From positions 1-64,000 of the IMG/VR virus record IMGVR_UViG_3300027782_000025: 64,000 nt of DNA. The stretch is one strand, 5' to 3'. The notes under the pieces are model-generated. The model was not told where the DNA came from, did not search any database, and was given only the letters and a program-made list of their open reading frames with translations. The position numbers and the translations under genes were made by a program. This document shows positions 10,600 to 59,584 of the stretch, piece after piece. Each line of letters starts with the position of its first letter. Positions within the stretch are counted from its first letter, which is position 1.

Positions 10600-10611
10600 T
10601 CTAGCCAATAT

Positions 10612-13085: not shown

Positions 13086-13179
13086 TCCGGTTTCCAACGA
13101 GGAAAGCGGGTGGGGTTTACTCCTCCACTCGCCTTTGTTACAGGGTTTTGGGGTTTTAGCATTTTTTCAAGGAGAAAAA

Positions 13180-13860
13180 ATGGAAAATAGCTTCTTTGGT
13201 GACAAAAGAGTCCTTTTAAAATTTGATAAAAGAGACCAAGAATTCGAGAAATGGTTACTGAATTGTGAAGATCAAGCAAATACCATAGCATATATTAATG
13301 GGGTAATCGATGGAAGATGGCCAGAAGCAGAGCCGATCTTAATGAAAACAGAATACGCCGTAGGATATGCAGATAAATTCATTAAAGGAAGATGGCTTGA
13401 AGCCGAGCCATATATAATGAAAAACCCAATATTGGCCTATTGTTACGCTGAAGAAGTTATAAAAGGAAGATGGCTAGAAGCCGAACAAACCATAATGACA
13501 GATCCAGAATGCACCATCGCCTATGCTTTAGAAATCATCAAAGGAAGATGGATAGAAGCAGAACCTTTTATAAAGACTTCCCCAGCATGTGCCGCGGCGT
13601 ACGCTATCGGTATCACCAAGATGAGATGGGAAGACACACAGCTTGAATTGCGTATACTTGAATGTACGACAGAGTTAAACTACATCAGAAATCCTTCATC
13701 TGACTATTGGCAACATTCATGGGGAACCGGTGTTACTAAATACGTTTATGCCAGAATGGTTGCTAAAACATCTTGGAAAAAGCTGTATGCCGAAGTTAAA
13801 GCCACGCATGCCGAGATCACATGTTACGATAACATTAATCTCGTCGGTGTCGAAGAGTAG
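13180..13860 (+). CDS. 26-aa repeat (GRWxEAEPxI) solenoid protein
   Basis: Repeats with 78-bp period; ends DNINLVGVEE like the modules of 39607-44634. Confidence 0.85.
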   Translation: MENSFFGDKRVLLKFDKRDQEFEKWLLNCEDQANTIAYINGVIDGRWPEAEPILMKTEYAVGYADKFIKGRWLEAEPYIMKNPILAYCYAEEVIKGRWLEAEQTIMTDPECTIAYALEIIKGRWIEAEPFIKTSPACAAAYAIGITKMRWEDTQLELRILECTTELNYIRNPSSDYWQHSWGTGVTKYVYARMVAKTSWKKLYAEVKATHAEITCYDNINLVGVEE

Positions 13861-15911: not shown

Positions 15912-15920
15912 GGAAAAAAC

Positions 15921-16417: not shown

Positions 16418-17173
16418 ATGAATGCTGAAATGCTACGAGCATCGGCTACTCCGAGTAAAGCTTGCAGATATGCCATTGACAATGTTACAAAACGATGGAG
16501 AAGAAAAAAAGCTTTAGAACCAATAATAATGACAAGCGCATTCTGTGCTATGGATTACGCTTGCCATGTGATTGAAGGTCGTTGGCCAGAAGCCGAACCT
16601 ATTATAATAACAAATCCATATGCTGCCTTAGAATACGCTATAAACGTTATCAAAGGTAGATGGCCGATAGGCGAACCAATTATATTAACGGACCCTGCGC
16701 GATCAGTATTATATGCTGAATACGTCATCCGTGGCCGCTGGTTAGATGCCGAACCGAGCATTATGACGTTAGAACCATGCCGTGGTGAACATATTCAACG
16801 CTATGCCAAGGAAGTAATGAAAGGAAGATGGCTAGAGGCAGAATCCAACCTATCAAAAGACGCAGAATATTCTTATATCTATGCCAGAGAAGTAATAAAA
16901 GGCCGCTTCCACGAGGCAGAGCCTACCATAAAGGCAAACACACGATATGCTTATCAATACGCAAGAGACTGCATCAGAGGAAGATGGGAAGACCCTTTGG
17001 TGGAATTAAGAATCCTAGAATACGGCAGCTTTAGCATTCGCGGCCGCCCATCAGAATACGCGCTTGAAATCGCAAAAATGTCACCAGACTCACTAAGAGC
17101 AGAACTCGAAATATACCTCGCAGATTTCTTGCCGAACGATAATGACGACCTTACCGACACCAAATCAGAATAA
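16418..17173 (+). CDS. 26-aa repeat solenoid protein
   Basis: About 7 GRWxxAEPxI repeats; cap RWEDPxVELRILE..YA..IAKMS and tail DDLTDTKSE. Confidence 0.85.
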   Translation: MNAEMLRASATPSKACRYAIDNVTKRWRRKKALEPIIMTSAFCAMDYACHVIEGRWPEAEPIIITNPYAALEYAINVIKGRWPIGEPIILTDPARSVLYAEYVIRGRWLDAEPSIMTLEPCRGEHIQRYAKEVMKGRWLEAESNLSKDAEYSYIYAREVIKGRFHEAEPTIKANTRYAYQYARDCIRGRWEDPLVELRILEYGSFSIRGRPSEYALEIAKMSPDSLRAELEIYLADFLPNDNDDLTDTKSE

Positions 17174-33846: not shown

Positions 33847-33967
33847 TTTCTTTCCTTTTTTTGGCGTTTTCTTTATATACTTTTTGTTTTTTTTTGTCTT
33901 GGCGGGCTTTTGGGTTAGCTTTTGCACTCTGATGCAAGGGAGATATCTTCATTGGGCTTGAATGTTA

Positions 33968-34597: not shown

Positions 34598-34838
34598 TGT
34601 TTTTTTCTTTCTTAAAGTCGAGGTGATTAACCTGCGCCATGGCGGTGCCGGTTTATCTATTTTTTTTTGATTCTACGTTGGACGCAAGGATGATATATGT
34701 GGTGGCCTTGCAGCATACGGGGTCTTATTTATTAAAAATGTTAGTGTCTGTCGGACATTTATAAAAATTGATTATTTTAAAATAATTGACTTAAATATAT
34801 AATGTTTATAAGATTAATTTTTTAGGGCTAAAATCACT

Positions 34839-35516: not shown

Positions 35517-35600
35517 ATTTTTAAAAACAATTCTTCTATAATAAATGAAGGTATTTATAATAAGTATTTCCATTAATCATTTTCTTCTAAAGGATAATAT

Positions 35601-37244: not shown

Positions 37245-37790
37245 TTATTTTGAAGCGGCTGGTCCAATGCCCATCCTTGCCATTTTTGCTGCAGAGTCTG
37301 CGTATGGGTCTTTAGTGCCAATGTTTTTCTTTACTGGCCCCTTGTCCTGTTGAAAGTCAGATCCCTTGCGCTGTAGAGCGCGTTGGTTTTGCCATATCTT
37401 ATTTCCATCCGGTAGTGTGCGAGTTCTTGGCTTTGGCTTGCCGTCGACATAAGGCATCGGATCGTGACCAACTGTTAGCTTTGGTGCCCCTGGTTTTCTA
37501 GGTGCTAGTCGATACGCTTTATTTTTACTTCTTAAACTAGATGGATCTAAAACTTCTAGGAGATGTAATAATCTGTCTATGCTTTCTTCGACTGGTTCTT
37601 TTTTGGCGAAGGGATTCCCTTCTTTTTCTTCTTTTTTGGCGAATGGGTTTTCTTTAGGAGTTTTAGCTTTTTTGCGTAAAAACTCTGGTTTTGCTCCCAT
37701 AGCGTCGCCGGTTTCTTTTTGCTTTTTGGTCGGCGTCTCGAGATCTTCGTTCATTAGTCTTGATACACTATCGATATTATATGCTGACAT
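37245..37790 (-). CDS. Lys-rich protein with Glu-flanked SIDRL spacer (putative head protein)
   Basis: N-terminus ..RLMNE; internal PVEE-SIDRLLHLLE. Confidence 0.7.
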   Translation of the reverse strand: MSAYNIDSVSRLMNEDLETPTKKQKETGDAMGAKPEFLRKKAKTPKENPFAKKEEKEGNPFAKKEPVEESIDRLLHLLEVLDPSSLRSKNKAYRLAPRKPGAPKLTVGHDPMPYVDGKPKPRTRTLPDGNKIWQNQRALQRKGSDFQQDKGPVKKNIGTKDPYADSAAKMARMGIGPAASK

Positions 37791-37838: not shown

Positions 37839-38981
37839 TCAATATTCTGCGTAGTCTCTGAGCTTGTCATAGAGTTTAGCGAGGAATCTGGAATGGTCGA
37901 TTACTTTTTTAAATCTCTGCTTTTCGGATTCAGTATTACCAGCTTTGCTTAAGGTGTTTTTGAGCTTATCCTCTGTTTGACCAAGAAAGGCTATTTCTGT
38001 AAGGATTTCTTCGAAATTAGATAAGTTACGGATGAAGTCGTATAGGTCACCTAGATATTCTCGCTGTACATTCGTGTTCTTATATTTTAGATATAATTTA
38101 TCTAATGAGCCTATATCTAGTTTAGATTTAATGACCATTAGGATGTTTTTAGCTTGTGTGATTATAGCAGATTGTAGTCTACCTAATTTAAGACTATGCT
38201 CTCTGGCTTTTTTGGCTGCTTCTGGTCTAAACTTATTAACTAATTGCCCAAAATAACCTGGTTTTTTATAATAGCCTGTGTCTTTCTCAGAGGTTATCTC
38301 TATGTTTTTATATTTCCTATTAGTTAAAAGTCTTAAAGCTTTCTCCTCACTATCGGCTTCGATGTGTCCGTGTTTGCGTATGCCGGTATTAGGATCATTA
38401 GCTATATATTCATATGTTTCTTCGGTTATTGGCTTTTTATTTTTCTTTTTGTGTTCGAGAGCTATAAATTCTTTTAAGCCTCTTATTAGACTACTGACAT
38501 CTGGTTCGATTTTAAGAAAGAGATCTTTACAGTTAGCTTTTAGAGTGGGCAGAACTTTGGCTAAGAAATATTTCGATAAAGCCGCAGGGTCTGTAACGTC
38601 AGCGTTGGCTGGGCGCTTTAGTCTCTGTTCATTAGATTTAATGATGTATTTGTTACGCTTGGTGTCAAATGTCGCTATTTTTATAGGTAGTGCGGCGCTA
38701 GGAAGTTTACTTAAGAAGCTAGGTGACTTTTTTAAATCTAGACCCAGATTAACATGGCGATAGTGGTAATCTATTACCACATTTACATATTTTTGGTTTT
38801 TTCTAGACTGCACGATCTGAGATACAGGGCCAATTTGTTTAGTCTGGCCGTTCCTATCTGTAAAACTGATTTGGTTTTTCGCCGGTATAAATGAGTATAC
38901 TTCATCTGCGGATCGGTCTTTAAGAGGTATAACCTGCTGGGTGCTTCCCACCACTTCATTTATAAGCTGATATAATCTCAT
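37839..38981 (-). CDS. Hypothetical with MRLYQLINE leader (putative head protein)
   Basis: 380 aa; leader class shared with other zone-3 genes. Confidence 0.75.
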   Translation of the reverse strand: MRLYQLINEVVGSTQQVIPLKDRSADEVYSFIPAKNQISFTDRNGQTKQIGPVSQIVQSRKNQKYVNVVIDYHYRHVNLGLDLKKSPSFLSKLPSAALPIKIATFDTKRNKYIIKSNEQRLKRPANADVTDPAALSKYFLAKVLPTLKANCKDLFLKIEPDVSSLIRGLKEFIALEHKKKNKKPITEETYEYIANDPNTGIRKHGHIEADSEEKALRLLTNRKYKNIEITSEKDTGYYKKPGYFGQLVNKFRPEAAKKAREHSLKLGRLQSAIITQAKNILMVIKSKLDIGSLDKLYLKYKNTNVQREYLGDLYDFIRNLSNFEEILTEIAFLGQTEDKLKNTLSKAGNTESEKQRFKKVIDHSRFLAKLYDKLRDYAEY

Positions 38982-39006: not shown

Positions 39007-39564
39007 TTAGACTATTGTTTTTTGTATGAATTCTAATTTATTATAATAGCATAAGTATTTGCCAATAGCTAGAACTGGTCCTCTTTTAGCGCATTCTTCG
39101 GCATATAAACCATCTTGAGAATATGTCTCTAGTCTTCTAACGCCTTTTGCATATTTATATTTCACCATAAAGCTGGCTGTGTCTATGTGTTCTACTTTAG
39201 GTGTTGCGGTCGCCTTTAGTCTACTACGTCCGCTTTGATCCAGCTGTCCCCAAGTTACGACAGCGAAGTCATCTAATGCGAGAGCGAATTCTACCGATTG
39301 AAACCATTTTTCGTGAATAATATTATCGTCATCTAAGACATATAGCCAGTCTTCATTTTTAAATGGGAAGTTATCATATACATGATTTATAGCCTTTGTG
39401 CCAGCAATTCCATTTTTACTACACATTAGGGTAGTTGTGTTAGGATACCTTGGGACTCCCTCTGGATTATCATGGCATATTATCCAATGTGCTTGTTTTG
39501 GTATGGAGTTATACATCTCAGGTAGGTTATATGATCTTGAGCATGGTGTGATTATATAGAGCAT
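39007..39564 (-). CDS. Glycosyltransferase family 2-like
   Basis: IITPCSR; WLYVLDDDN; IDTASF..DG. Confidence 0.7.
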   Translation of the reverse strand: MLYIITPCSRSYNLPEMYNSIPKQAHWIICHDNPEGVPRYPNTTTLMCSKNGIAGTKAINHVYDNFPFKNEDWLYVLDDDNIIHEKWFQSVEFALALDDFAVVTWGQLDQSGRSRLKATATPKVEHIDTASFMVKYKYAKGVRRLETYSQDGLYAEECAKRGPVLAIGKYLCYYNKLEFIQKTIV

Positions 39565-39606: not shown

Positions 39607-42600
39607 TTATTCTTCGTCTATGTCGGATAAGTTAATGTCGTCGTCTGCGGTGGTATCTTTGAAATTTTTAAGATGCTCTCTTGCGGCTATGGCTTCACCT
39701 CTGAGGCGTCTTCGTAAATCATATTGAATGTTTTTTTGTTTTTTATGTTCTGGCGCTGGCCACTCGTGTTCCCAAGCGTCTTTTAGCGAGTTTTCATAAT
39801 CTTTATTAAGTTTTTTTTCTTCATCATGAAACGCTCCTATTAATAAACTCTTAATGGAGCTGGGTATGGTTCGATCATCTAATATCTCTTTTGGCGGATA
39901 GGGTTCTTTATATGAAAATAAATCTGCTCCGATTTTGAAGTTTTCGGCTCCTTTTTCCTTATATTCGTCCGCTTTTGCTTTGAGCGCTATAATAGATTGC
40001 TGAAACTTGGGTGGGTAGCTTCCAAAAAATCTGGCTCTTATTTTATTTATCGCTTTATCTAGCCAATTGCTGATAGGGTAATATTCTTTAAATTCCCTTC
40101 TACGCCCCCAATAGTCTTTTCTACTAGCTTCATATATAAGTGGCATTAATCTGTCTATAGCTTCGTCGGTAGTATCTGTCAAATTAATATCATCGTGTGG
40201 CACTATATCCTTTATCTTTAACTCGATTTCAGCTAAAAGATCTTCCCTAGTCATAACCGCCACATGTTCGGCATACGGCATTTCCCAAGGAGCGTTTAAG
40301 ATTAATAACTCGGTTTTAGGATCTTCCCATCTACCGTTATCATATCTGGGATTGTCTTTATCGAACGGCTTGATTACATCTTCAGCATAGTAGTATGCAT
40401 ATTCAGGGTCCTGTTTAATGGCCATTTCTCCTTCTGGCCATCTTCTTTTTAAAACATACTGGGCATAAAATAATGATGATTTTGCATCCGTAGAGATGAT
40501 TGGTTCAGCTTGCTTCCAAGGTCTATCAAGGACGTAATTCGCATAGAGGTAGGAAGCATAGGGGTGAGTTAGTATCTTAGGTTCAGCTTTGGGCCATCTT
40601 TTTTTTATAACGAATCTTGCCGTGGTGTAACATTCAAGAGCGTCTCGGCGGTTAATATCATAATCTTCTGGATCGACTTTATTCTCAGCTATAAGCGGCA
40701 TAAATCTATCGATCGCTTCTTCTGCGGTTCCAGACAGATCGGTCTCGTCATTTTTTATGAAAAACTGAGATGTTGATTTTACTTCATCTAAGAAGTCTTT
40801 AAATGGTATTTTTACTAGTCTATCAGCGTAAACTTTTGCGCGCCCCAGGTCTTTAATTATTATTGGTTCTGCTATATACCACCTTTCACCTAGTACAAAT
40901 TGAGCATAAAGCGATGCTACATGCGGATCTTTAATAATGGTACGCTCGGCCTCAGGACATCTCATTTTATTGACATTATCCTTATCTAAACTCCTAAAAT
41001 AAACATAATTAAATGCATTAATAGGACTCATCCTTTCAAAATCTGGTAGCTCTTCAGCATTCTCCATAATAAGTGGCATTAATCTATCGATCGCTTCTTC
41101 GGTTGTGTCAGTAAGATTCCTGTTTTCGTCTGGGAACATTTGACCCATTCTTATATCGACATCAGCTTGAATAACCTCTAGTGGCATGTGCGCAACATAT
41201 TGGGCGTAAAAGTAGGCATACTTTGGATCTTGCAATATGAATGGCTCAGCATCTTCCCACCTTAATTTATCCCTCTGGCCTGATTTACTATAGATATCTC
41301 TGGCATAAATATAAGCCCACTTTGGACTTTTCATAATATATTCTTCAGCATTAATGAATCTTTTCTTTCGATCGGCTTTTCTAATCGGCTCATGGTTTAA
41401 GACATTCTTAGCGTACGCTGAAGCATATTCTGGGTCATGTTTTATGATTTCTTCTGCGTCACTTAACCATTGTTCACACTTGCCATCTTGGTCCATTTTT
41501 AGAATGAAATTATATGCATAATTATAACATTCTTGTGGTGTCAGCTTTTTAGGATCTGGCAGAAGCCCTTCGATAATGAGCGGCACCAGTCTGTCGATTG
41601 ACTCATCAATACCAGTTAAGTCTTTGTCTTCTTGTGGGTGTAAGTCTCTTCGAATAGCTTCGACTTCTGCTAAAAATTGCTCATACGGCATCTGTGCTAT
41701 ATTTCTAGCATACCTTTCGGCCCAGCGTTTATCTCGTATTATGTAAGGTTCGGCCTCTGGCCACCTTATACCGAGGTTTTTACGTCTGTTTATTACATAA
41801 TCGACATATTCGTAAACATATTCTGGTGATGTTATTATATATGGCTCTGCCTCTGGCCACCTTTTGCCAAGATTTTTGCGTTTGTTGATAACATAATCAG
41901 CATATCTGCAAGCATATTCTGGTGATGTCTTTATAGATGGCTCTGCCTCTGGCCACCTTATACCGAGTCCTTTCTCTTTGTTGATAACATAAACGGCATA
42001 TTTGCAAGCATATTCAGGTGATGTCTTTATAGATGGTTCGGCCTCTGGCCACCTTTTACCGAGGTTTTTACCTTTGTTAATGGCATCTAACGTATAAAAG
42101 AAAGCATATCTTGGGTCTTTCATTATATATGGTTCGGCCTCTGGCCACCTCTTACCGCGGTTTTTACCTTTGTTCATATAACGGTAGATTTCATACTGAG
42201 TCATTTTGCTTGGGTCTGGCTCTTTTTTGTTTTCGCTGATAAGTGGCATCAGTTTATCGATCGACTCTTCGACGGTGTTGGATAAATCCAAATCATCCCC
42301 GCTAGTTAATTCCGATATCTTCATCTCTGCGTCTGCCTTAAGATCTTCAATTGACATTTTGGCTACCTCTGTACAATAAGCATATAGGTAATAACCATAA
42401 TCATCAACATCATCATCTTCGAAATGCTCTATTATTCGTAATTCGACCATTGGAGCTAATCTGATTTTACTTATATCGGTGGCATAGGACAGGGCAAATC
42501 GAAGATCCTTTCCTCCTAAAATAAGCGGTTCAGCAGCTTTCCAAGTGCCCTTTATAACGTTCTTAGCATAATTGAACGCCCAGTATTGATCTGTTAATAT

Positions 42601-44634
42601 TATGGGTTCGGCTTCGACCCATTCACCTTCTATGATGTATTGAGCATACTTATAAGCATACTCAGGTGATTTTAGGATTTCGCTTTCCTGCTTGGGTGTA
42701 AGTCCTTCTTCTTTAGCATTCTTCTTATCTAATGCTATATGAAAGAGCGCCATTGCGCGACGATTATCTTCACTACTTTCCACGATTATCTGCGTGGTGC
42801 TTTTTAATCCTTCTTCGGTGGTTTTAGATAGATCTAGATCATCAGCTGCATTCAGACCATTTAACTTTCTTTCTATATCCGATTTTAAAGCTTCTATCGA
42901 CATCTCAGCAACATTATTGGCGTAGAGTTCGCATATTTCGCTTTCTTTTTCTGAGTCATTTTCGGGTATGACAGGGTCGTGGTCTTCTAAGATTCTTGAC
43001 TCAGTCTCTATATCCCATCTTCCATTATCGTGATCATAGTCAGCTTGGTTAGAGGGTTTTATGATATAACGTGCATATAAATAAGCGATATAGGTATTGT
43101 TCTTTATAACGTTTTCGGCTGTCTTCCATCGCCTACCTAGGACATCTTTGGCATATGCATAGGCCCAGTATGGTTCAGACATAATCGTAGGCTCGGCTTC
43201 CTCCCATCTTTTGCCTAGGCATTTGCCATCATTAATAACATCGCGAGCATAATAGTAGGCTGCCCCCGGGTCTCGCATCATAACTGCTTCAGCCTTGGGG
43301 TCTGGCTCATAGTCTTCGCCATGTAGTTGTTTAGTCTTGTAATCGGTTATGGCATAAGTATAAACCGTAGTTGGTGTCATAGTTGAATAATCGCGTTCGA
43401 CTACAGCCTCAACAATGAGCGGCAATAAATTATCAATGGCTTCTTCAATAGTGTCTTTTAAGTCGATTGAGTCATGATAATGAAGATCGTTTAATTTATT
43501 TTCGATATCTTCACGTAATTCATCTTCTGAAGTCTTTGCCACGTGCTCTGCATAGTATTTTGCCGAACCACTATTAATTATACCTAGCTCTATTTCGGGA
43601 CTCTTCCAACGTTCCATTAATATGTCTCTAGCGTATCCATACGCTAGATGTGGATCAACCACTATGAATGGTTCAGCTTCTAACCATCTACCTCTATCGT
43701 AATCTGGATTTTCTTTATCATACGGCCGTATTACAAGCAAGGCATAATAATAGAGGTAATCTCTATCGTTATGTTCAATGCCTATATTTTTTAGAATATA
43801 TGGTTCGGCTTCAGGCCATCGACGTTTAAGATGATCTATGGCATAATGCACCATTACTCGAGCGCTGCTAGTTCTAACGTCTGGTTCGGGGTGTTTAAGG
43901 TTCGGATCCCACTTTGATTCTTCAACCACGTTCGTAAAATCTATGTCTTGGCCTGTATGTAGCACCTCTAGACGATAGTTTACTTCATCGTTTAATTCTT
44001 TGATCGTAAGCTCCGGTGCAACTGTGCGAGCATAAAGGGAGCCATAGATACTATCCAGAATTCTTCTCTCAGTCTGCGGATTATCATATCTTTTAGGATG
44101 TTTAAGATCCATACAATATAACGTGGCTATATAAGGATCATTAGAGATTACTGCCTCGGCATCTTCAGCATGTGGACCATCCCACTGATGCTCAAGGGCG
44201 CTTTTAGCATATTCGTAAGCCCAGTCTGGTCTAGAGGCCATAACTCGTTCTATCAAAGGCCACTTGCCCTTAACCAATTTAGCGTAATGTAGAGCAAGAT
44301 TTGGATCGGTACTAATCTTATCTTCGGCATAACGCCCTATTTCACTGTCAGGCCAAGGACCATCTAAGACATTTATTGCATAATACGCTGCAGCCTTAGG
44401 GTCTTCTTTAATGACGACTTCACCGTTAGGCCATTCTCGATAAAGGCGATTTTGCGCAAATAAATAGCAATTAAATGGCGTCCAATAAGGATCATTAGGC
44501 ACAGGGTCTTTATGTGATTTGGGTCGGTTTTGAAACGATGGCTCTGAGATATTCCGATTTTCTATAAGCATATGTTTTATAGCATCGATAGAAATTAGAA
44601 GATCGATACCGACTTGGTGCTTTTTATTACTCAT
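39607..44634 (-). CDS. 1675-aa multi-module 26-aa-repeat solenoid protein (putative polyprotein)
   Basis: Eight RWPEAEP-repeat modules plus one unrelated C-terminal domain, each ending in an acidic DxxxTxEE-like tail. Confidence 0.85.
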   Translation of the reverse strand: MSNKKHQVGIDLLISIDAIKHMLIENRNISEPSFQNRPKSHKDPVPNDPYWTPFNCYLFAQNRLYREWPNGEVVIKEDPKAAAYYAINVLDGPWPDSEIGRYAEDKISTDPNLALHYAKLVKGKWPLIERVMASRPDWAYEYAKSALEHQWDGPHAEDAEAVISNDPYIATLYCMDLKHPKRYDNPQTERRILDSIYGSLYARTVAPELTIKELNDEVNYRLEVLHTGQDIDFTNVVEESKWDPNLKHPEPDVRTSSARVMVHYAIDHLKRRWPEAEPYILKNIGIEHNDRDYLYYYALLVIRPYDKENPDYDRGRWLEAEPFIVVDPHLAYGYARDILMERWKSPEIELGIINSGSAKYYAEHVAKTSEDELREDIENKLNDLHYHDSIDLKDTIEEAIDNLLPLIVEAVVERDYSTMTPTTVYTYAITDYKTKQLHGEDYEPDPKAEAVMMRDPGAAYYYARDVINDGKCLGKRWEEAEPTIMSEPYWAYAYAKDVLGRRWKTAENVIKNNTYIAYLYARYIIKPSNQADYDHDNGRWDIETESRILEDHDPVIPENDSEKESEICELYANNVAEMSIEALKSDIERKLNGLNAADDLDLSKTTEEGLKSTTQIIVESSEDNRRAMALFHIALDKKNAKEEGLTPKQESEILKSPEYAYKYAQYIIEGEWVEAEPIILTDQYWAFNYAKNVIKGTWKAAEPLILGGKDLRFALSYATDISKIRLAPMVELRIIEHFEDDDVDDYGYYLYAYCTEVAKMSIEDLKADAEMKISELTSGDDLDLSNTVEESIDKLMPLISENKKEPDPSKMTQYEIYRYMNKGKNRGKRWPEAEPYIMKDPRYAFFYTLDAINKGKNLGKRWPEAEPSIKTSPEYACKYAVYVINKEKGLGIRWPEAEPSIKTSPEYACRYADYVINKRKNLGKRWPEAEPYIITSPEYVYEYVDYVINRRKNLGIRWPEAEPYIIRDKRWAERYARNIAQMPYEQFLAEVEAIRRDLHPQEDKDLTGIDESIDRLVPLIIEGLLPDPKKLTPQECYNYAYNFILKMDQDGKCEQWLSDAEEIIKHDPEYASAYAKNVLNHEPIRKADRKKRFINAEEYIMKSPKWAYIYARDIYSKSGQRDKLRWEDAEPFILQDPKYAYFYAQYVAHMPLEVIQADVDIRMGQMFPDENRNLTDTTEEAIDRLMPLIMENAEELPDFERMSPINAFNYVYFRSLDKDNVNKMRCPEAERTIIKDPHVASLYAQFVLGERWYIAEPIIIKDLGRAKVYADRLVKIPFKDFLDEVKSTSQFFIKNDETDLSGTAEEAIDRFMPLIAENKVDPEDYDINRRDALECYTTARFVIKKRWPKAEPKILTHPYASYLYANYVLDRPWKQAEPIISTDAKSSLFYAQYVLKRRWPEGEMAIKQDPEYAYYYAEDVIKPFDKDNPRYDNGRWEDPKTELLILNAPWEMPYAEHVAVMTREDLLAEIELKIKDIVPHDDINLTDTTDEAIDRLMPLIYEASRKDYWGRRREFKEYYPISNWLDKAINKIRARFFGSYPPKFQQSIIALKAKADEYKEKGAENFKIGADLFSYKEPYPPKEILDDRTIPSSIKSLLIGAFHDEEKKLNKDYENSLKDAWEHEWPAPEHKKQKNIQYDLRRRLRGEAIAAREHLKNFKDTTADDDINLSDIDEE
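41740..42175 (-). repeat. Five 96-bp tandem coding repeats
   Basis: CTCTGGCC at 41755, 41851, 41947, 42043, 42139. Confidence 0.9.
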
Positions 44635-44716
44635 AAAGATATTGCCGTGCTACATAATATTAATATATTATATATTTTAATAACATACGGATTAAAACGA
44701 TCTGTAGTGATTATAT

Positions 44717-45578: not shown

Positions 45579-46901
45579 TCAACCTACACCCAATGGCCCT
45601 ATATCTCTAATATACATCTTATATCTGGATGGGTCTACTGCCTTTAGTATGCCTTCTATTTCTAGCCATCGATGCCCCAAAACATCAGTACAAAACATAT
45701 TTATGATAGGAATATTATTAAGAGCCGTTTCAATATCGAAATCATATATTACCTTCTCCCTGATCTCGTCTGATGTCATTTTTTCGAAGCTTGTTAGAAA
45801 GTAAGGATATTTGCTAATTATTAAGATGTTAGTAACCGGATCATCCCATAGTTTTCCGAAATGTCTTGCGTAATTCATTGCTTCGTGAATACTAGACTGT
45901 ATGATTTGCTCGGCCGCTGGCCAAGGGCGCTCTAAAACATTCCTTGCGTATTCACTAGCGAGGTAATCGACTCTAAGAATGGCCGGTTCGCCTTTTGGCC
46001 ATGGCGCCTTGAGTATCTGATTTGCATAGACATAGCTACTATCAGCATGTCTTGATATTGCATTTTCAGCCTCTGGCCAGCTTTCGTAGCCTTTATCTCT
46101 AGCGAAAATAACTAAATCCGCTGGTTTAATAACTTTCGAATCTACCAGGTCATCAATTTGTTTCGATGATAATCTGCTTAAATCTGATGTTTCATAATAA
46201 TGTCGCCAGTTCTTCTCGTCTTGGTCAGATTCGCCCTCAAGTAAAAAACTTCTCAATTCGCTGTTGATCTGGGCCATATTACTCAAGAATATTTTAGCAT
46301 ATGAACTGCAGTTAGTAGTTTTATGGTCTTGTATATCTTTCTTAGCCTTAGATATTATCTGGTGATCGACGATAGCGCCGTTTTTTCTTCCTGTCCATCT
46401 CTTCCTTAAAATCTTCAGAGCATAGAGGGCGGCAGTTTCGGGATCTGACCCTATTATGCTTTCGCCTAATTCCCATTCTTCCTTAAGAATCGTCATAACA
46501 TATGCTAAAGCGCCCTGTGGTGTTTCGATGATAATTGATTCCGCTGTTCTCCATCTCCCTGATTTATTATGGCTATTGCTTTCGATTATTATAGAAGCAT
46601 AATCGATTAGATTTTTAGGGTCCCGTCGTTCCAGTAGTTCTCTTTCACCAGCCGGCCATCTCTCCCCAATTATATCAGCATAGTCGATTATCTGTTTTAA
46701 AGACATCTCAGCAGGATCTGGTTCACCACTCTTCTCTTCTAGCATAGATATATTCATCGCCTCTGTAAAAAATCCGGCGGCATCATAAAACGAACGCTTG
46801 GCATTTACCGAAACGCTTACTTCTTCTAACAGACGCATACTATCCATACCCAACGGCATTTTTTTAAAGCGGCCAGTATTATGATTTTGCGGGTTTTTCA
46901 T
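45579..46901 (-). CDS. 26-aa repeat solenoid protein, two modules (start uncertain, possibly 46838 MRLLEE)
   Basis: RWPAGE, RWRTAES, WPEAE, WPKGEP, WPAAE repeats. Confidence 0.8.
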   Translation of the reverse strand: MKNPQNHNTGRFKKMPLGMDSMRLLEEVSVSVNAKRSFYDAAGFFTEAMNISMLEEKSGEPDPAEMSLKQIIDYADIIGERWPAGERELLERRDPKNLIDYASIIIESNSHNKSGRWRTAESIIIETPQGALAYVMTILKEEWELGESIIGSDPETAALYALKILRKRWTGRKNGAIVDHQIISKAKKDIQDHKTTNCSSYAKIFLSNMAQINSELRSFLLEGESDQDEKNWRHYYETSDLSRLSSKQIDDLVDSKVIKPADLVIFARDKGYESWPEAENAISRHADSSYVYANQILKAPWPKGEPAILRVDYLASEYARNVLERPWPAAEQIIQSSIHEAMNYARHFGKLWDDPVTNILIISKYPYFLTSFEKMTSDEIREKVIYDFDIETALNNIPIINMFCTDVLGHRWLEIEGILKAVDPSRYKMYIRDIGPLGVG

Positions 46902-47504: not shown

Positions 47505-48986
47505 ATGCGTTTATTATCGATTCTAGAGGGTATTTGGCCCCATAACATTAAATTACACGGTCCTTATTCAGAGCCGGTGAATGTTTATCTGGCTCTTGAC
47601 GGTGTTCTTTCGGAGCCTGATTGGGGCGAAATGGCACACAGATATAAGACCGATAAAAACCTTAAAGCATTCTATGCTAGGGTTATAAAAAACCAGAAAT
47701 TGATCGATACAGCTGCTAACTTAATTAAAAGCGTTAATTCGCAGGACACCGGCAAAAAAGGTAACTTATACATTGCCGCCTATTCGATACCTAGGGATTT
47801 AAGAATTAACCCTACTGTGCTTCAGCAAGCGATCATTGATTGGGCGCACGATAATTATCCTCAGATACCTCAGGCTAATATCCTGTTTAGTAAACCAAAG
47901 GGTGTAGGCGCGAGCGATATATTAGTCGATAGAAATATCGATAATATTAGAGGATGGCAAGAATCGCAGGGTGTTGGTATTCTATACGATGCTAATAAAC
48001 CTACCTTCGCCATTCGGAGCCTTAAAGCTCCCCCAGGTCCGATGTCAGCCAAAATAGATGTCGAAAAAGAAGGGATGTTTACTACTGATTTTTCTCGTGA
48101 AGATCGAAAATTATCTCAAACAGGCCAATTCCAGATAAAAGACGAAGAAGACGGTGTTCTTAGAAACTATCGCGTCTTTATTGATAAAATCGCGCTAAGG
48201 ACTGAGAGCGGTGAATCTAAGAAGATGTCAGTATTTTCACCTTATTCTACTGATAACAAAGCTGAACAATATCTGTTCGGCTTATTAAAGAAAGAGAAAG
48301 ATCCTAATCCTTCGAGCCCTGACCCAGAACACGCTGAATATGCTCTAAATGAATTTGTAGAAAGAGCCGCTGTATGCCTTTCAGATAATTTCTTGAAAAA
48401 AGCAGGGCCATTTGGTTCGATCCACATTCCGGCTTCTGGGTCAGAAGTGGCGATTAATTTCGCTTCTGTGCTCCAGGACGAATTAGGCATTCCTAGTGAC
48501 AGCATTTATGTGTGGACTAAAAATAAAGACCCACAAAGCGTCATCGTTAATCAAGAAGGCGTTAAACAAGTTGCATATGGTAACTTAGTAAGAGACTTTA
48601 AACTTACTTCAAACACCCGTTCAAAGAAAGAAGTTAAAAGCGATAACGAAAGACTAGTCTTTGATGCTCTACGAAGCGGTGCGATTACTAATGATCAGCT
48701 TGAGGAATATCTAAATAAAATAAATATGTCATGGAAAAAGCAAGCTACTGAGTGGGTTTTAGGTAATAAGGCCACGAAAAATCTTGATCCACATATAAGA
48801 CGCGGTAATTTATTGAATCTATATGTTCCGCCAGCGAATCTAGATGTCGAGTCGCTTGCGGGTACTAAGGTCTTACTAGCAGATGACGTCGTTACATTTG
48901 GGATGACCCTTATTAATATCGCCACAAGTCTACTCAAGGCTGGCGCTGAAGATATCACAGCTGCCACAATTTACAAGTTCATGTAG
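47505..48986 (+). CDS. Protein with MRLLSILE leader and C-terminal phosphoribosyltransferase domain
   Basis: VLLADDVVTFGMTL..IA..L..AGA PRPP-binding loop; SD GGAG before ATG 47505. Confidence 0.75.
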   Translation: MRLLSILEGIWPHNIKLHGPYSEPVNVYLALDGVLSEPDWGEMAHRYKTDKNLKAFYARVIKNQKLIDTAANLIKSVNSQDTGKKGNLYIAAYSIPRDLRINPTVLQQAIIDWAHDNYPQIPQANILFSKPKGVGASDILVDRNIDNIRGWQESQGVGILYDANKPTFAIRSLKAPPGPMSAKIDVEKEGMFTTDFSREDRKLSQTGQFQIKDEEDGVLRNYRVFIDKIALRTESGESKKMSVFSPYSTDNKAEQYLFGLLKKEKDPNPSSPDPEHAEYALNEFVERAAVCLSDNFLKKAGPFGSIHIPASGSEVAINFASVLQDELGIPSDSIYVWTKNKDPQSVIVNQEGVKQVAYGNLVRDFKLTSNTRSKKEVKSDNERLVFDALRSGAITNDQLEEYLNKINMSWKKQATEWVLGNKATKNLDPHIRRGNLLNLYVPPANLDVESLAGTKVLLADDVVTFGMTLINIATSLLKAGAEDITAATIYKFM

Positions 48987-50600: not shown

Positions 50601-50616
50601 AGTGCGCCTTTAAAAA

Positions 50617-50646
50617 TGATCACGCCACTTACACTGGCGTGATAGG
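50617..50646. terminator. Intergenic hairpin
   Basis: ATCACGCCA/TGGCGTGAT between radical SAM and GT genes. Confidence 0.45.
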
Positions 50647-50654
50647 ATCATCGA

Positions 50655-52319: not shown

Positions 52320-53390
52320 TTATTCTTGCTCAAGATCTGAAAGGTCAAGACCATCATCTTTGAGAAGCTCTGATACTATGAAATTATTGTTTTCTATGAA
52401 AGATTCTAAATCTTCAAAGCCAGCCAATACCGTCGCATAAAATTTAAGCTGACTTCTAGCATGACCACTTAATTCTTTAAGCTTTATCATCTCGCGTTCT
52501 AATGCCGGATCGTCCCAAAAATAAGTCGTCAACGAGCCAACAGCATAATTAAGAGCTTGTCTAGTGTCTGTCTTAATTATACCCTCAGCCTCTCTCCAAC
52601 GCTCTTCTAGAATCTCGTTAGCATAATCTACACAGCATTCGGCATTTTTTAATTCTAAGAGTGCGTCTTCGCCATCAGGCCAAGAGCCTTTAACATGAAT
52701 ACAATATTCACATATCGCTCTAGGGTTTGTTAAGATAACTGGTTCGCCTTCTGGCCAAGGCTCACCCATGATGTCTTTAGCGTATAAATAGCAAGCATAC
52801 GCACTTTTTAGCACATATGGTTTAGCTAATTCGAATATCTCATCCCTATATTCAGGACTTACTTTATATGAATTAAGGAATTGTACAACTTGTATCGGCC
52901 TCCATAATTTAAATTCGGGTATCTCGTAAGGCCCGACCCACGCTTCAATGATTGATCTCTTTTCCATGAGCGAATCTATAGCGTTTTCGAGTTTTTCGTT
53001 TAACATTGAATCAAGACCATCGCTTGATAACAGATCCTCGATCTTTAAATTAAATGATTTACAATAAATAGGTGCCCAAACCATAGATTCGGCTATGGTT
53101 TTATTGGCTCTCTGGTTTTTCCAGCGTTCGTGCATTATATCCTGAGCATACCTAACAGCAGAGGTCGGGTCTTTAGCTATAGTGTCTTCTGCATCAGGCC
53201 ATCTTATAGGAATACCGTGGTTATTTTTATTTATTACATTTTTGGCATACAGATATGATAAGTAAGGGTCAGTTTTAATTATATTTTCATTTTCGAAAAT
53301 CCTAAGACCTGTTAAAACAGCTGATTTATAACATTCCGCCGGCGATTTTATTTTTTGGGTAATGCTCTTTTTAACAGCATGATTAAGCAT
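52320..53390 (-). CDS. 26-aa repeat solenoid protein, two modules
   Basis: RWPDAE/WPEGEP/RWREAE repeats; internal LENAIDSLMEKRSIIE; tail DLSDLEQE. Confidence 0.8.
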   Translation of the reverse strand: MLNHAVKKSITQKIKSPAECYKSAVLTGLRIFENENIIKTDPYLSYLYAKNVINKNNHGIPIRWPDAEDTIAKDPTSAVRYAQDIMHERWKNQRANKTIAESMVWAPIYCKSFNLKIEDLLSSDGLDSMLNEKLENAIDSLMEKRSIIEAWVGPYEIPEFKLWRPIQVVQFLNSYKVSPEYRDEIFELAKPYVLKSAYACYLYAKDIMGEPWPEGEPVILTNPRAICEYCIHVKGSWPDGEDALLELKNAECCVDYANEILEERWREAEGIIKTDTRQALNYAVGSLTTYFWDDPALEREMIKLKELSGHARSQLKFYATVLAGFEDLESFIENNNFIVSELLKDDGLDLSDLEQE

Positions 53391-53405: not shown

Positions 53406-55127
53406 TTACACGTAGGAAGCTTCTTGAGCGCCTAAGGTCGGCACATCTATCTTGAGATCCTGTAACTTTTTTATAACATCAGCATATAACAATTGACCTT
53501 TTTTCTTAGGATCATTTTGATCGACTATAGTCGAGAGTGCCTGCCATATTTCTAGAGGTACCAATTCGACCATCTTGGCTGTGAACTTATTAAATCTTAT
53601 CAGCGTTACTAAAGAACGAATATCGCCGCACAAGCATACCACCACCCTTGGATCGCCCATAATATCTTCGGCCCCAGCACCAGAGCTTAAAAACTGAACC
53701 ATTGGCGCAGGGAAGGTTTTTCTATCTGACACAGGCCTTCTTAGCCCTAAAAATAGTTCCTTGGTCGCTGTTTTGCCTATAACCAGATGGCCCGCTGCGT
53801 GGTAAATGACTGAGCCGTATATCGTTGGTTTTCTCACAAATAGGCTAACGATTTCTTTTGTACTATCAGAGATCTCTAATTCGGAGTCACTAGCTAATCC
53901 GTAGCCGCTAGCTGAACCGGTACCAGCCAAATAGAGTTCGGATAAGCCTAATATTTGCAAGGTTTGCATTAAAGATGAGGTATCGAAATCTGCGCCAGCA
54001 TCGTTTAATTTGTATTTCACTTCGTTCCTTGCATTGTCGATAAGAGGTTTAACTGCTATAGAGATAAATTTAGGATTCCTAGCGAGTTGAAGGCTATCGA
54101 CTATTTGTGATCTTAACTGTGGATTATTTGTTACCTGTTCAACACCACCAAACCTGACTATCCCAGCGATATTTTCAGCTTGAACTTCCTGATAGTTTTT
54201 GATGTAACCTATCGTTTCATCCTGAGTAGCGCCCTCTGGTGGGCTATAAGATAACATCGTCTTAGCCGCCATCATCGCAGTCAAAAACATCTTATTAATG
54301 TTCGTATCCACTTTATTTCCGACCTCTGCGCCAGAGCGATCCATGAACTGCTCGTCTTTCCCCTTCACTACTGTTTGGTAGGTAGCCACTTTATCCTTAA
54401 ACATTGTATAGATAGAATCATTTTTAAGATAATTCTCAGCTCTGCTGCCGTTAGGATAATCAGTCCTAGTGCACCATTTCGACCCCATACCAGCCTCTGC
54501 TAAAGACGTGATTACGGTTTCTGGTTCTAAGCCAAAATTTTTAGCCAAGTCCAATCGAGGATACATGTAGACCTCATACCCATTTTGGTCTAGCATCTTT
54601 ACAGCACCGCTTGTGACAATGGGATTGAAAGCTGTGGCCTTCTTATTTCTTAACTTGTCCATAAGATTTTGGGAGGCAATCAGTGCGCTTCTTATATCAT
54701 GTTTAAGTAAGTCTGTAGGTACTTCGGGAAAATTCTTTTTTAGTTGGTCTTTTCGTCCTGGATTACTAAAAAATTGGATAAGTTCGACCATACTTGCTGT
54801 ATCTTCAGGCAGTTTAATCTGTGGATTATCGCTTGGCATATTCCGGAATCCGTCGATAGCGATTTTACCATCATTGAATTGTGCTGATATCCACGGCTTT
54901 TTTAGGAATTCGGTACCGACCACCCACTTTTTCGTCGGTGTCGGATCACAGTCAGATATAATTTTTACCAATTCTGCTGCCTTACCCAGGTCTTGTGATT
55001 CAATACCAGATGATTTAGGATCAATCGATGGCATCTTATCTCCGCACATAAACTGTATTCTTTTTGGGTCTAGTTTCGATAAGACTTTTTGGATATCAGT
55101 ATTTTCGAGAATTAAGGATAACTTCAT
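53406..55127 (-). CDS. Hypothetical with MKLSLILE leader (putative head protein)
   Basis: 573 aa; GSKWCTR motif. Confidence 0.75.
   Translation of the reverse strand: MKLSLILENTDIQKVLSKLDPKRIQFMCGDKMPSIDPKSSGIESQDLGKAAELVKIISDCDPTPTKKWVVGTEFLKKPWISAQFNDGKIAIDGFRNMPSDNPQIKLPEDTASMVELIQFFSNPGRKDQLKKNFPEVPTDLLKHDIRSALIASQNLMDKLRNKKATAFNPIVTSGAVKMLDQNGYEVYMYPRLDLAKNFGLEPETVITSLAEAGMGSKWCTRTDYPNGSRAENYLKNDSIYTMFKDKVATYQTVVKGKDEQFMDRSGAEVGNKVDTNINKMFLTAMMAAKTMLSYSPPEGATQDETIGYIKNYQEVQAENIAGIVRFGGVEQVTNNPQLRSQIVDSLQLARNPKFISIAVKPLIDNARNEVKYKLNDAGADFDTSSLMQTLQILGLSELYLAGTGSASGYGLASDSELEISDSTKEIVSLFVRKPTIYGSVIYHAAGHLVIGKTATKELFLGLRRPVSDRKTFPAPMVQFLSSGAGAEDIMGDPRVVVCLCGDIRSLVTLIRFNKFTAKMVELVPLEIWQALSTIVDQNDPKKKGQLLYADVIKKLQDLKIDVPTLGAQEASYV

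Positions 55128-58153: not shown

Positions 58154-59584
<1,431 letters not shown>

What the first reader, a model, noticed from the sequence alone, without database searches (positions are those of the whole stretch)
39607..44634. 1675-aa apparent polyprotein: eight solenoid modules joined by a Glu-flanked 11-aa spacer
Seen: each module has 2-5 repeats of about 26 aa (RWPEAEPxIxxDPxxAYxYAxxVI), a cap (YAxxVAxM..E.L..(D/E)I), and an acidic tail (DxDL(S/T)xTx(E/D)E). Modules 1 and 2 join directly at VVEE (43918). Seven spacers follow: AIDNLLPLIVE (43408), GLKSTTQIIVE (42778), SIDKLMPLISE (42232), SIDRLVPLIIE (41569), AIDRLMPLIME (41062), AIDRFMPLIAE (40683), AIDRLMPLIYE (40129). The spacer resembles the protein's own N-terminus (SIDAIKHMLIE). 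The final unrelated domain ends with the same tail (DINLSDIDEE), as do the free-standing paralogs. Each unit therefore looks like a whole former gene. Established: T4 gp21-type prohead proteases cut after (I/L)xE. Inference: one ORF delivers about nine separate variant binders into the capsid and host, an array-like effector system I do not recognise as described.
Basis: partly seen in the sequence, partly recalled or inferred. Interest (0 to 1): 0.9.

Follow-up and report, generated by a model that had tools for sequence, protein, structure and literature searches.

The report
Phage polyprotein of shuffled binder modules
A giant freshwater phage encodes a 196-kDa protein built of eight helical-repeat modules joined by a conserved 11-residue peptide that looks like a cutting site for the T4-type capsid protease found in the same genome, so one gene probably supplies the capsid with a changeable set of separate proteins.

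Summary
ORF 39607-44634(-) is intact (1675 aa). It has eight alpha-solenoid modules, seven Glu-terminated 11-aa spacers and an unrelated C-terminal domain. Spacers are the best-conserved part: 56-75% identity between modules, against 26% for the module bodies. Their synonymous codons differ, so selection acts on the peptide.

New evidence bears on the interpretation. The window is the first 64 kb of a 274,625-bp viral contig. At 103-123 kb that contig encodes a T4-type head module: portal, Peptidase_S77 (gp21-type) protease, and a Gp23-type capsid protein whose propeptide carries I-L-E sites. At least ten other proteins of this genome start with short peptides ending hydrophobic-(I/L)-x-E, like the T4 capsid-targeting sequence. 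So do 37 of 116 free-standing relatives of the repeat family. Orthologues carry 4-10 spacer junctions. Modules are shuffled, duplicated or lost exactly at spacers. AlphaFold gives confident modules but low-confidence tails and spacers.

Packaging, cleavage and delivery to the host remain untested. The closest described concepts are T4 internal proteins and "polyvalent proteins". I rate it a new variant of a known kind, confidence about 0.5.

The parts
39607..44634 (-). Whole ORF: 1675 aa, 196 kDa, pI 5.0; predicted polyprotein
   Evidence: identical on 6 contigs
44560..44634 (-). N-terminal 25 aa ending SIDAIKHMLIE (aa 15-25): spacer-like, predicted targeting/propeptide with an L-I-E site
   Evidence: conserved in orthologues P0122-P0128
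43441..44559 (-). Block B (aa 26-398): solenoid modules 1 and 2, joined by a tail-only junction DIDFTNVVEES (43915-43947) with no spacer. Always first in orthologues
43408..43440 (-). Spacer 1, AIDNLLPLIVE (aa 399-409)
42811..43407 (-). Module C with cap and acidic tail (aa 410-608)
42778..42810 (-). Spacer 2, variant GLKSTTQIIVE (aa 609-619). In 7 of 9 cases this variant precedes module type A, whatever lies upstream
42265..42777 (-). Module A (aa 620-790)
42232..42264 (-). Spacer 3, SIDKLMPLISE (aa 791-801)
41602..42231 (-). Module I (aa 802-1011): five near-identical 32-aa repeats, seen as a 96-bp tandem DNA repeat at 41750-42178. Absent from orthologue P0123
41569..41601 (-). Spacer 4, SIDRLVPLIIE (aa 1012-1022)
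41095..41568 (-). Module D (aa 1023-1180)
41062..41094 (-). Spacer 5, AIDRLMPLIME (aa 1181-1191)
   Evidence: pLDDT 42-50
40717..41061 (-). Module G (aa 1192-1306)
   Evidence: block pLDDT 58-85, mostly 80-85
40684..40716 (-). Spacer 6, AIDRFMPLIAE (aa 1307-1317)
   Evidence: pLDDT about 45
40162..40683 (-). Module F (aa 1318-1491)
   Evidence: pLDDT 85-96
40129..40161 (-). Spacer 7, AIDRLMPLIYE (aa 1492-1502)
   Evidence: pLDDT below 50
39610..40128 (-). Domain E (aa 1503-1675): non-repeat, no Met, ends in the acidic tail. Always last in orthologues; deleted exactly at the spacer in P0126
37245..37790 (-). 181-aa protein. It starts MSAYNIDSVSRLMNE, has an internal EESIDRLLHLLE, then a very basic C-terminal part. 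It is the best non-self hit of the spacer profile
37839..38981 (-). 380-aa protein starting MRLYQLINE (CTS-like); syntenic partner of the polyprotein
47505..48986 (+). 493-aa protein starting MRLLSILE, with a weak phosphoribosyltransferase/ComF-like C-terminus
53406..55127 (-). 573-aa protein starting MKLSLILE
58154..59584 (-). 476-aa protein starting MKLSILYE; N-terminal domain resembles that of the 380-aa protein by eye (not aligned)
45579..46901 (-). 440-aa repeat-family paralogue with two spacer-like peptides near its N-terminus (GMDSMRLLEE, AMNISMLEE followed by KSGEPDP); no acidic tail
52320..53390 (-). 356-aa two-module paralogue with a degenerate internal tail+spacer (NAIDSLMEKRSIIE) and a C-terminal acidic tail
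16418..17173 (+). 251-aa free-standing paralogue in the early-looking region: acidic tail but no CTS-like N-terminus. AlphaFold gives an alpha-solenoid with a disordered tail
13177..13860 (+). Free-standing paralogue with an acidic tail (DNINLVGVEE) and no CTS-like N-terminus

Best explanation
The ORF is a capsid-targeted polyprotein of a jumbo phage that builds its head the T4 way.

Proposed mechanism:
1. The N-terminal 25 residues, and perhaps the internal spacers, act like a T4 capsid-targeting sequence and bring the 196-kDa precursor into the prohead core.
2. The phage's gp21-type (Peptidase_S77) prohead protease cuts after the Glu of each hydrophobic-(I/L)-x-E spacer.
3. This yields a 45-kDa di-module, six single solenoid modules of 15-26 kDa and a 20.5-kDa non-repeat domain. 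Each fragment except the last keeps the 11-residue spacer at its C-terminus.
4. The fragments stay in the head with the DNA and are most likely ejected into the host, where the solenoids bind targets.
5. The middle of the array is a cassette region. Modules are duplicated, lost and reordered at the conserved junctions, so related phages carry different sets.

Shown: the anatomy; peptide-level conservation of spacers; module shuffling; the protease, portal and capsid genes in the same genome; enrichment of (I/L)-x-E N-terminal peptides; flexible junctions in the model.

Inferred: packaging, cleavage, ejection and binding.
For: 1. The window is positions 1-64,000 of contig IMGVR_UViG_3300027782_000025 / Ga0209500_10000004, 274,625 bp. 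The locus fetched at 102.7-123.4 kb (L018) holds these genes in this order: terminase, T4-type portal (E 2.9e-66), a 1047-aa acidic protein, Peptidase_S77 (E 3e-15, above the curated cut-off), a 242-aa protein (scaffold position), and a Gp23-type capsid protein (E 1.9e-78). All of these except the terminase (not checked) are identical to the proteins first seen on sister contig L016.
2. The protease aligns with T4 gp21 (E 4e-12). GEFDHP matches GELNHP, GISSRGVG matches GVSSRGLG, and DAVAEPS matches DAVWGPS.
3. The capsid protein has an 88-aa N-terminal extension with SILE and MILE just before the Gp23 domain. T4 gp23 has FLTE-65 in the aligned region.
4. T4 IPII and IPIII start MKTYQEFIAE. Residues 8 and 10 of that targeting sequence are the ones needed for processing. 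T4 Alt is cut at ITE-6 and LTE-619 (PMC9026906, PMC5694885).
5. In this genome 14 of 139 ORFs start with M-x(2-12)-hydrophobic-(L/I)-x-E, against 3.9 +/- 1.9 in shuffles; none of 300 shuffles reached 14. They include four genes around the polyprotein and five in or next to the head module.
6. 37 of 116 free-standing repeat-family proteins start the same way, against 2.7 expected. One such phage (355,825 bp) also has an S77 protease.
7. By my reading of the 58-row junction table of eight orthologues, 56 junctions end (I/L)-x-E or L-I-E.
8. The free-standing single unit P0134 has a spacer-like N-terminus (..DVNKIASLITE|NPDEF), one module and the tail. The 472-aa protein five genes downstream of the capsid gene starts almost the same way.
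9. The tail co-varies with the upstream body (0.61 against 0.43-0.45). The variant spacer goes with the downstream module type.
10. In the AlphaFold models the modules reach pLDDT 80-96, tails and spacers stay below 50, and pTM is 0.35. The tail of the free paralogue is disordered.
11. Units F and E have no nearby Met or ribosome-binding site.
Against: - There are no proteomic or expression data. Cleavage and packaging are inferred from sequence only.
- Spacer conservation covers all 11 residues plus the tail, much more than a P4-P1 site needs. This could mean a docking or structural role.
- In T4 the targeting sequence works at the N-terminus, and one copy would be enough.
- One junction lacks the Glu (P0124, PLIGK) and one has lost a residue (P0122, PLIE).
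- Another 19 (I/L)-x-E motifs lie inside the modules, so the motif alone does not define a cut.
- The gene lies about 68 kb from the protease gene (about 60 kb from the nearest signature-bearing gene beside the head module), among glycosyl- and methyltransferases. No shared late-promoter motif was found.
- The paralogues at 13-17 kb have the tail but no N-terminal signal, so the family need not be packaged.
- The AlphaFold model rests on only 8 sequences.
Confidence: 0.5

Rival explanations
1. The protein is an uncleaved multi-module protein, 'beads on a string'. It stays at 196 kDa, in the virion or the cytoplasm. The conserved tail+spacer is then a repeated docking or linker peptide, for example for a scaffold, a chaperone or a host partner, and it gives avidity to an array of binders.
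For: The whole 11-mer plus tail is conserved, not only P4-P1. Block B is a stable fusion of two modules without a spacer, and one K-K junction has lost its Glu. Large uncleaved packaged proteins are known, such as the N4 virion RNA polymerase (PMC5512222). The spacers are predicted helical, though at low confidence.
Against: Glu at P1 and I/L at P3 are kept in 56 of 58 junctions, while P2 and P1' vary freely. The same ending marks the N-termini of many unrelated proteins of this genome and the capsid-protein propeptide. A matching protease is encoded. The deletion in P0126 and all module rearrangements end at spacers.
Confidence: 0.2
2. The protein is a prohead core or scaffold component rather than a cargo. 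It is targeted and cut as proposed, but the pieces help head assembly and are then expelled or degraded, like T4 gp22, gp67 and gp68. They are not delivered to the host.
For: The protein is acidic overall (pI 5.0). In T4, core proteins are cut at several sites and cleared (PMC5694885). Multiple cuts help clearance in SPN3US (PMC10052503).
Against: The modules are folded solenoids of 15-26 kDa, not short peptides. Module content turns over fast between close relatives, which is unusual for an assembly part. The genome already has scaffold-position genes next to the protease. Paralogues without a targeting signal exist.
Confidence: 0.15
3. The protein is processed by a different protease, either the stand-alone putative metallopeptidase 12 kb away (window 56279-56824, PF18894, HELCH motif) or a host enzyme. 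This would follow the model proposed for polyvalent proteins with zincin-like peptidases.
For: A PhageMetallopep gene lies in the same gene neighbourhood. Zincin-like peptidases are the commonest domain of polyvalent proteins and are proposed to release their domains (PMC5512222).
Against: Nothing links this peptidase family to cleavage after Glu. The site signature matches the gp21 type, and the same signature sits on the capsid-protein propeptide, which is an S77 substrate in T4. The peptidase is not embedded in the polyprotein.
Confidence: 0.07

Closest known systems
T4 internal proteins (IPI-III) and Alt: capsid-targeting sequence plus gp21 processing
   Same: Both have a short peptide ending hydrophobic-(I/L)-x-E (T4 MKTYQEFIAE; here ..LIxE). 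Both genomes encode a gp21-type S77 protease, a Gp23-type capsid protein and a T4-type portal. In both, CTS-bearing genes cluster and vary away from the head genes. T4 Alt is cut at both ends.
   Different: In T4 each cargo is a separate gene with one N-terminal signal. Here up to eleven units sit in one ORF with the signal repeated internally. The spacer consensus (AIDRLMPLIxE) is a different sequence from the T4 CTS. The modules are acidic solenoids of an uncharacterised family. The phage is only distantly T4-like: the protease is 28% identical to gp21, and the window genes tried found no close cultured relative.
Polyvalent proteins of phages and conjugative elements (Iyer, Burroughs, Anand, de Souza, Aravind 2017, PMC5512222)
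   Same: One large polypeptide with 2-15 units, encoded by a phage, predicted to be packaged and delivered with the DNA. The units are released by proteolysis, and the whole is read as a multi-pronged arms-race device.
   Different: Polyvalent proteins combine disparate catalytic and DNA-binding domains, usually with embedded peptidases. Here the units are paralogous repeat modules plus one unknown domain. No Pfam, NCBIfam or PHROG domain and no embedded peptidase was found. The junctions are a repeated, conserved site for a trans-acting protease.
Ejection and inner-body proteins of phiKZ / SPN3US-type giant phages
   Same: Head-internal proteins of jumbo phages are cut at several sites after Glu by a gp21-related protease; paralogous families occur.
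   Different: Those proteases belong to family S80 and prefer A/S/G at P3. Cleavage there removes long N-terminal propeptides and leaves one mature product. Here P3 is I/L, the protease is S77, and every piece between cuts is a folded module.
Polyproteins of eukaryotic RNA viruses (analogy only)
   Same: One ORF, conserved short cleavage sites between folded units, and a virus-encoded protease.
   Different: There is no homology. Here the protease is encoded separately and acts inside the prohead, and the units are variants of one fold rather than a set of different enzymes.
Alpha-solenoid repeat families (HEAT, TPR, Sel1, designed helical repeats)
   Same: Helix-turn-helix repeats of 26-32 residues form a solenoid (pLDDT 86, pTM 0.79).
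   Different: No sequence-family match was found. Foldseek gave no significant structural match: best PDB E-value 0.19, best viral E-value 0.027 to an uncharacterised protein. The RWPEAEP repeat is an unnamed family.

Membership tests
Substrates of a T4 gp21-type prohead protease (CTS-bearing head-internal proteins) | The same genome encodes a gp21-type (Peptidase_S77) prohead protease within a T4-type head module | tested here: met
   PF03420 at 56.7 bits (cut-off 27); 100% identical copy on this contig at 112,703-113,422; flanked by Portal_T4 and Gp23 genes; BLASTP against T4 gp21 gives E 4e-12 with the H, S and D motifs aligned
Substrates of a T4 gp21-type prohead protease (CTS-bearing head-internal proteins) | A short peptide ending (L/I)-x-E at the N-terminus, as the processing and targeting signal | tested here: met
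   N-terminal aa 15-25 and all 7 spacers end (I/L)-x-E. 56 of 58 junctions in orthologues do so. The T4 reference sequences were read from NC_000866
Substrates of a T4 gp21-type prohead protease (CTS-bearing head-internal proteins) | The protein is present in proheads or virions and is cut at the predicted Glu | not testable with these tools
   Needs virion or prohead mass spectrometry, or co-expression with the protease. The phage is uncultured
Substrates of a T4 gp21-type prohead protease (CTS-bearing head-internal proteins) | Late expression together with head genes | tested here: inconclusive
   ATATAATA lies upstream of the polyprotein, the 573-aa gene and the 476-aa gene, but no shared motif with head genes was found, and sigma-70-like sites are not above chance
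Polyvalent proteins (Iyer et al. 2017) | Two to fifteen units in one polypeptide of a phage or mobile element | tested here: met
   Nine units here (eight modules plus domain E); orthologues carry 4-10 spacer junctions
Polyvalent proteins (Iyer et al. 2017) | Units are disparate effector domains (ART, methylase, helicase, ParB, anti-restriction and others) | tested here: not met
   No Pfam, PHROG or NCBIfam domain. Eight units are paralogues of one repeat family
Polyvalent proteins (Iyer et al. 2017) | Embedded peptidase (zincin-like MPTase, assemblin-like, LonC or DD) | tested here: not met
   No peptidase domain in the ORF. A stand-alone PF18894 gene lies 12 kb away and the S77 protease 68 kb away
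phiKZ/SPN3US-type ejection proteins (S80 protease substrates) | S80 protease and an (A/S/G)-x-E cleavage motif | tested here: not met
   The protease scores 56.7 bits on S77 against 16.6 bits on S80, which is below the S80 cut-off. P3 of the spacers is I or L
Named alpha-solenoid repeat families (HEAT, TPR, Sel1, ankyrin, DUF4116) | A significant profile or structural match to the family | tested here: not met
   No Pfam or PDB sequence hit. Foldseek best E-value 0.19 (PDB) and 0.027 (BFVD)

The most novel reading that the evidence does not exclude
A clade of T4-type-head jumbo phages packages a recombining cassette array as one precursor. Four to eleven variable solenoid binders are strung together, each bounded by a conserved prohead-protease site. 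Head maturation turns a single gene product into a strain-specific cocktail of injected proteins. The wider RWPEAEP repeat family, about a third of whose sampled members carry T4-like targeting peptides, would then be a large, unrecognised class of capsid-delivered phage proteins.
Probability: 0.35. Interest if true: 0.8.

Novelty: new variant of a known kind. Interest (0 to 1): 0.68.

Why it matters
If the spacers are cut, this is a compact way for a phage to load its capsid with many different proteins in fixed proportion. The phage could also change the set by simple recombination at conserved junctions. That would extend the T4 capsid-targeting paradigm from 'one signal, one cargo' to a polyprotein.

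It would also show a form of polyvalent protein that depends on the head protease instead of an embedded peptidase.

Two further leads follow. The first is a large uncharacterised repeat family (RWPEAEP solenoids), found in uncultured phages and in very long signal-peptide-bearing, apparently cellular proteins. The second is a sequence signature, M-x(n)-hydrophobic-(I/L)-x-E, that could be used to predict capsid-internal proteins in uncultured T4-type phages.

The spacer is also a candidate portable tag for packaging several foreign proteins into a phage head.

Tried and rejected
- Known families: Pfam, PHROGs and NCBIfam gave nothing for the polyprotein or the repeat family beyond one sub-threshold PHROG stretch of unknown function. 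PADLOC was not run.
- Solved structures: PDB sequence search found nothing.
- Cultured phages: megablast and tblastn of the ORF, tblastn of P0007 and tblastn of the 573-aa neighbour against 50,697 phage records found no match. The helicase, radical-SAM and ligase genes find only distant relatives.
- Stop-codon recoding as the cause of the odd first 32 kb: rejected, because ORF lengths do not improve.
- DNA-level repeat or recombination site as the reason for spacer conservation: rejected, because synonymous sites differ. The only DNA tandem repeat lies inside module I.
- Internal translation starts as a way to make separate modules: rejected, because there is no ribosome-binding site, and no Met near the start of F and none at all in E.
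- Shared late promoter: not found.
- Literature search for the repeat motif: no paper.
- Contig walk: five look-ups from 64 to 110 kb met baseplate- and tail-fibre-like genes and metabolic genes, but no recognisable head genes. The sixth reached the head module.
- IMG/VR relatives of the polyprotein: only this contig was found.
- Fold search of the low-confidence multi-module model: not run, because it would be meaningless.
- Spacer-downstream linkage: the overall test that the spacer travels with the downstream module is weak (0.665 against 0.633). Only the variant spacer shows it clearly.
Full report
**1. The observation**

The minus-strand ORF 39607-44634 is intact and encodes 1675 aa.
- There are seven 11-residue spacers, each ending in Glu, at aa 399-409, 609-619, 791-801, 1012-1022, 1181-1191, 1307-1317 and 1492-1502.
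- A spacer-less junction, DIDFTNVVEES, joins modules 1 and 2.
- A spacer-like SIDAIKHMLIE sits at aa 15-25.
- The C-terminal tail is DINLSDIDEE.
- RW(P)EAEP-type repeats recur throughout.
- Four paralogues lie in the window, and three end in the acidic tail.

The same ORF occurs on six contigs, from at least three samples.

**2. More than chance, and at the peptide level**

Between the six single modules, bodies are 26% identical, caps 27%, tails 46% and spacers 56%. Without the one variant spacer the figure is 75%. Codons of the spacers differ at synonymous positions. The only DNA tandem repeat lies inside module I.

A 50-column profile of cap+tail+spacer (alignment A2) was run against 1.84 billion representative proteins. 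It retrieved only the polyprotein clade, two fragments of it and one free-standing unit, P0134. Two further hits are an LRR protein and a FIVAR-like repeat protein, and both are spurious.

**3. Relatives and module dynamics**

Word-indexed searching found seven related polyproteins of 1068-2360 aa, some of them truncated. A junction HMM catalogued the junctions; the later table lists 58. Clustering the bodies gives the following maps. Letters are arbitrary cluster labels for module types:

| Protein | Module order |
|---|---|
| P0121 (this window) | B C A I D G F E |
| P0122 | B C A I D G F L E |
| P0123 | B C A D G F E |
| P0124 | B C A A M D J H K K E |
| P0125 | B C N A F J A D O H E |
| P0126 | B C A D H P F G |
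| P0128 | B R H S E |

Block B is always first and domain E is always last. Everything between is duplicated, lost or reordered, with break points at the junctions.

In P0126 domain E is deleted and the ORF stops inside the spacer (..PLIN*). The usual downstream gene follows.

The tail co-varies with the upstream body (0.61 against 0.43-0.45). The variant spacer (GLK..IIVE or DVI..IIVE) precedes module type A in 7 of 9 cases, behind four different upstream types. Overall, however, spacer identity is only slightly higher for a shared downstream body than for a shared upstream body (0.665 against 0.633).

Exceptions to the terminal Glu are one PLIGK junction (P0124, between two K modules) and one PLIE junction with a one-residue deletion (P0122).

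**4. What genome this is**

The window equals positions 1-64,000 of JGI contig Ga0209500_10000004, also known as IMGVR_UViG_3300027782_000025, which is 274,625 bp long. Cultured-phage databases hold no close relative. Most genes have no PHROG or Pfam hit.

I walked along the contig with look-ups of encoded proteins.
- 64-72 kb: a baseplate-like 1267-aa protein (weak match to Tail_P2_I).
- 72-92 kb: sugar and nucleotide metabolism genes.
- 93-100 kb: a 2264-aa tail-fibre-like protein.
- The next look-up returned a sister contig (L016) carrying terminase, T4-type portal, a 1047-aa protein, Peptidase_S77, a 242-aa protein, Gp23 and then the 629-aa query protein.

Pfam confirms Portal_T4 (E 2.9e-66, with an intein), Peptidase_S77 (56.7 bits, cut-off 27) and Gp23 (E 1.9e-78). 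A scan of IMG/VR with the protease returned this very contig at 112,703-113,422 with 100% identity (L018). All seven proteins of the module that were checked are identical in L018.

Against T4 gp21, read from NC_000866, the protease gives E 4e-12. The blocks around the presumed catalytic His, Ser and Asp align; the residue assignment follows PMC5694885.

**5. The cleavage and targeting signature in this genome**

T4 IPII and IPIII begin MKTYQEFIAE. The first ten residues are the capsid-targeting sequence, and residues 8 and 10 are the ones needed for processing. T4 Alt is cut at ITE-6 and LTE-619, and gp21 itself has LIE-9 (PMC9026906, PMC5694885).

In this phage:
- The Gp23 homologue has an 88-residue N-terminal extension containing ..SILE and ..MILE just before the Gp23 domain. 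T4 has FLTE-65 in the aligned region.
- The protease has ..VIAE near its N-terminus, and the 242-aa protein has ..RIIE.
- Proteins in or beside the head module start MNLSIILE (629 aa), MNISSILHE (182 aa), MKIKQIITE (343 aa), MKYDLIVE (149 aa) and MKNDKYDVNDIAKFLTE (472 aa).
- Around the polyprotein, four large proteins start MRLYQLINE, MRLLSILE, MKLSLILE and MKLSILYE.
- The 181-aa protein two genes downstream of the polyprotein starts MSAYNIDSVSRLMNE. It also carries EESIDRLLHLLE, which is the best non-self hit of a spacer profile.

With one uniform pattern, 14 of 139 ORFs match, against 3.9 +/- 1.9 in shuffles.

**6. The repeat family**

The free-standing 251-aa paralogue has more than 200 relatives in metagenomes, none with a meaningful name. 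Two distant relatives are signal-peptide proteins of about 1700 aa made of some forty repeats.

Of 116 family members, 37 begin M-(K/R)-x(3-10)-hydrophobic-x-E, against 2.7 expected. Examples are MRAKEFFVE and MRLFEFIME, which are close to the T4 sequence.

In two unrelated contigs such genes cluster, five in a row in L012 and four in L013. The 355,825-bp phage that encodes P0048 also encodes an S77 protease 59% identical to ours.

P0134 and P0136 are single units with a spacer-like N-terminus, one module and the tail.

**7. Structure**

AlphaFold on the free paralogue (120-sequence alignment) gives a confident alpha-solenoid (pLDDT 86, pTM 0.79) with a disordered tail. Foldseek finds no significant relative in the PDB or BFVD.

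AlphaFold on aa 1170-1675 (8-sequence alignment) gives confident modules G and F. Tail+spacer segments and domain E have low confidence (below 50 for the tails and spacers), and pTM is 0.35. There is no sign of a continuous solenoid. The alignment is shallow, so this is weak evidence.

**8. Alternatives examined**

- Internal translation starts are excluded for units F and E.
- Stop-codon recoding is not supported.
- A stand-alone putative metallopeptidase lies 12 kb away. It is a possible alternative protease, by analogy with polyvalent proteins (PMC5512222).
- The protein could also remain uncleaved, or serve as a consumable core component.

**9. Verdict**

The anatomy is real and unusual. 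Packaging, cleavage and delivery remain inferences.

The nearest described systems are T4 CTS-bearing internal proteins and polyvalent proteins. This ORF differs from both in being an array of paralogous modules with a repeated site for a trans-acting protease. I classify it as a new variant of a known kind.

Noticed in passing
window 1-32000 versus 32000-64000: GC falls from 44-53% to 32-40% at about 32 kb, with strong strand skews (AT skew 0.41 at 30-32 kb). The first half holds many small ORFs. Repeat-family paralogues lie in both halves, so it is one genome. Stop-codon recoding does not explain it.
   Followed up: partly
L018:4288-6786 (contig about 116.6-119.1 kb): The T4-type portal gene (832 aa) carries an intein (Intein_splicing, E 2.8e-9, aa 98-248).
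   Followed up: no
L018:6847-9990 (contig about 113.4-116.6 kb): A 1047-aa protein lies between portal and protease, in the position of T4 gp67/gp68. It has a PA-rich linker and a C-terminal stretch of about 250 aa that is almost pure Asp/Glu, ending DDLDNIDL.
   Followed up: no
window 56279-56824 (+): Stand-alone putative phage metallopeptidase (PF18894, E 2.6e-12, HELCH motif) in the neighbourhood of the CTS-like genes.
   Followed up: partly
window 47505-48986 (+): A 493-aa protein with a CTS-like start (MRLLSILE) and a weak phosphoribosyltransferase/ComF-like C-terminus. It is a candidate packaged enzyme.
   Followed up: partly
window 37245-37790 (-): A 181-aa protein with a Lys/Glu-rich repeat (NPFAKKE), a spacer-like EESIDRLLHLLE and then a very basic C-terminal half. 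The basic half recalls the basic T4 internal proteins.
   Followed up: partly
L014:477-7271 (contig 92,987-99,781): A 2264-aa tail-fibre-like protein with a collagen-like stretch and Pro/Thr-rich linkers. Its length differs in the sister contig (2025 aa there).
   Followed up: no
window 41750-42178: A 96-bp tandem repeat, 4.5 copies, 81% matches. These are the five 32-aa repeats of module I, apparently a recent expansion.
   Followed up: yes
window 44666-44673, 55153-55160, 59597-59604 (-): An exact ATATAATA lies 13-32 nt upstream of the start codons of the polyprotein, the 573-aa gene and the 476-aa gene. There are 10 copies in the window against 4.4 expected. It was not found before the head genes.
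   Followed up: partly
P0129, P0130 (not in the window): Proteins of 1641-1760 aa with a signal peptide and about forty RWPEAEP repeats, Ala/Arg-rich and probably from cellular genomes. The repeat family is therefore not confined to phages.
   Followed up: no
window 33283-37009, 39007-39564, 49866-51614, 57410-58147: The polyprotein sits among several methyltransferases (FkbM type and others), glycosyltransferases (families 11, 2 and 92-like), a radical-SAM enzyme and a PhyH-type dioxygenase.
   Followed up: no
window 10528-10599 (-): A single tRNA-Met gene.
   Followed up: no
L012 (JGI 3300077752, 52-kb contig) 10001-16109: Five consecutive genes start MR(L/F)..E-type peptides (433, 276, 378 [DUF6267], 161 and 95 aa), upstream of a 1512-aa protein. 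The same N-terminal signature therefore clusters in an unrelated, smaller phage.
   Followed up: partly
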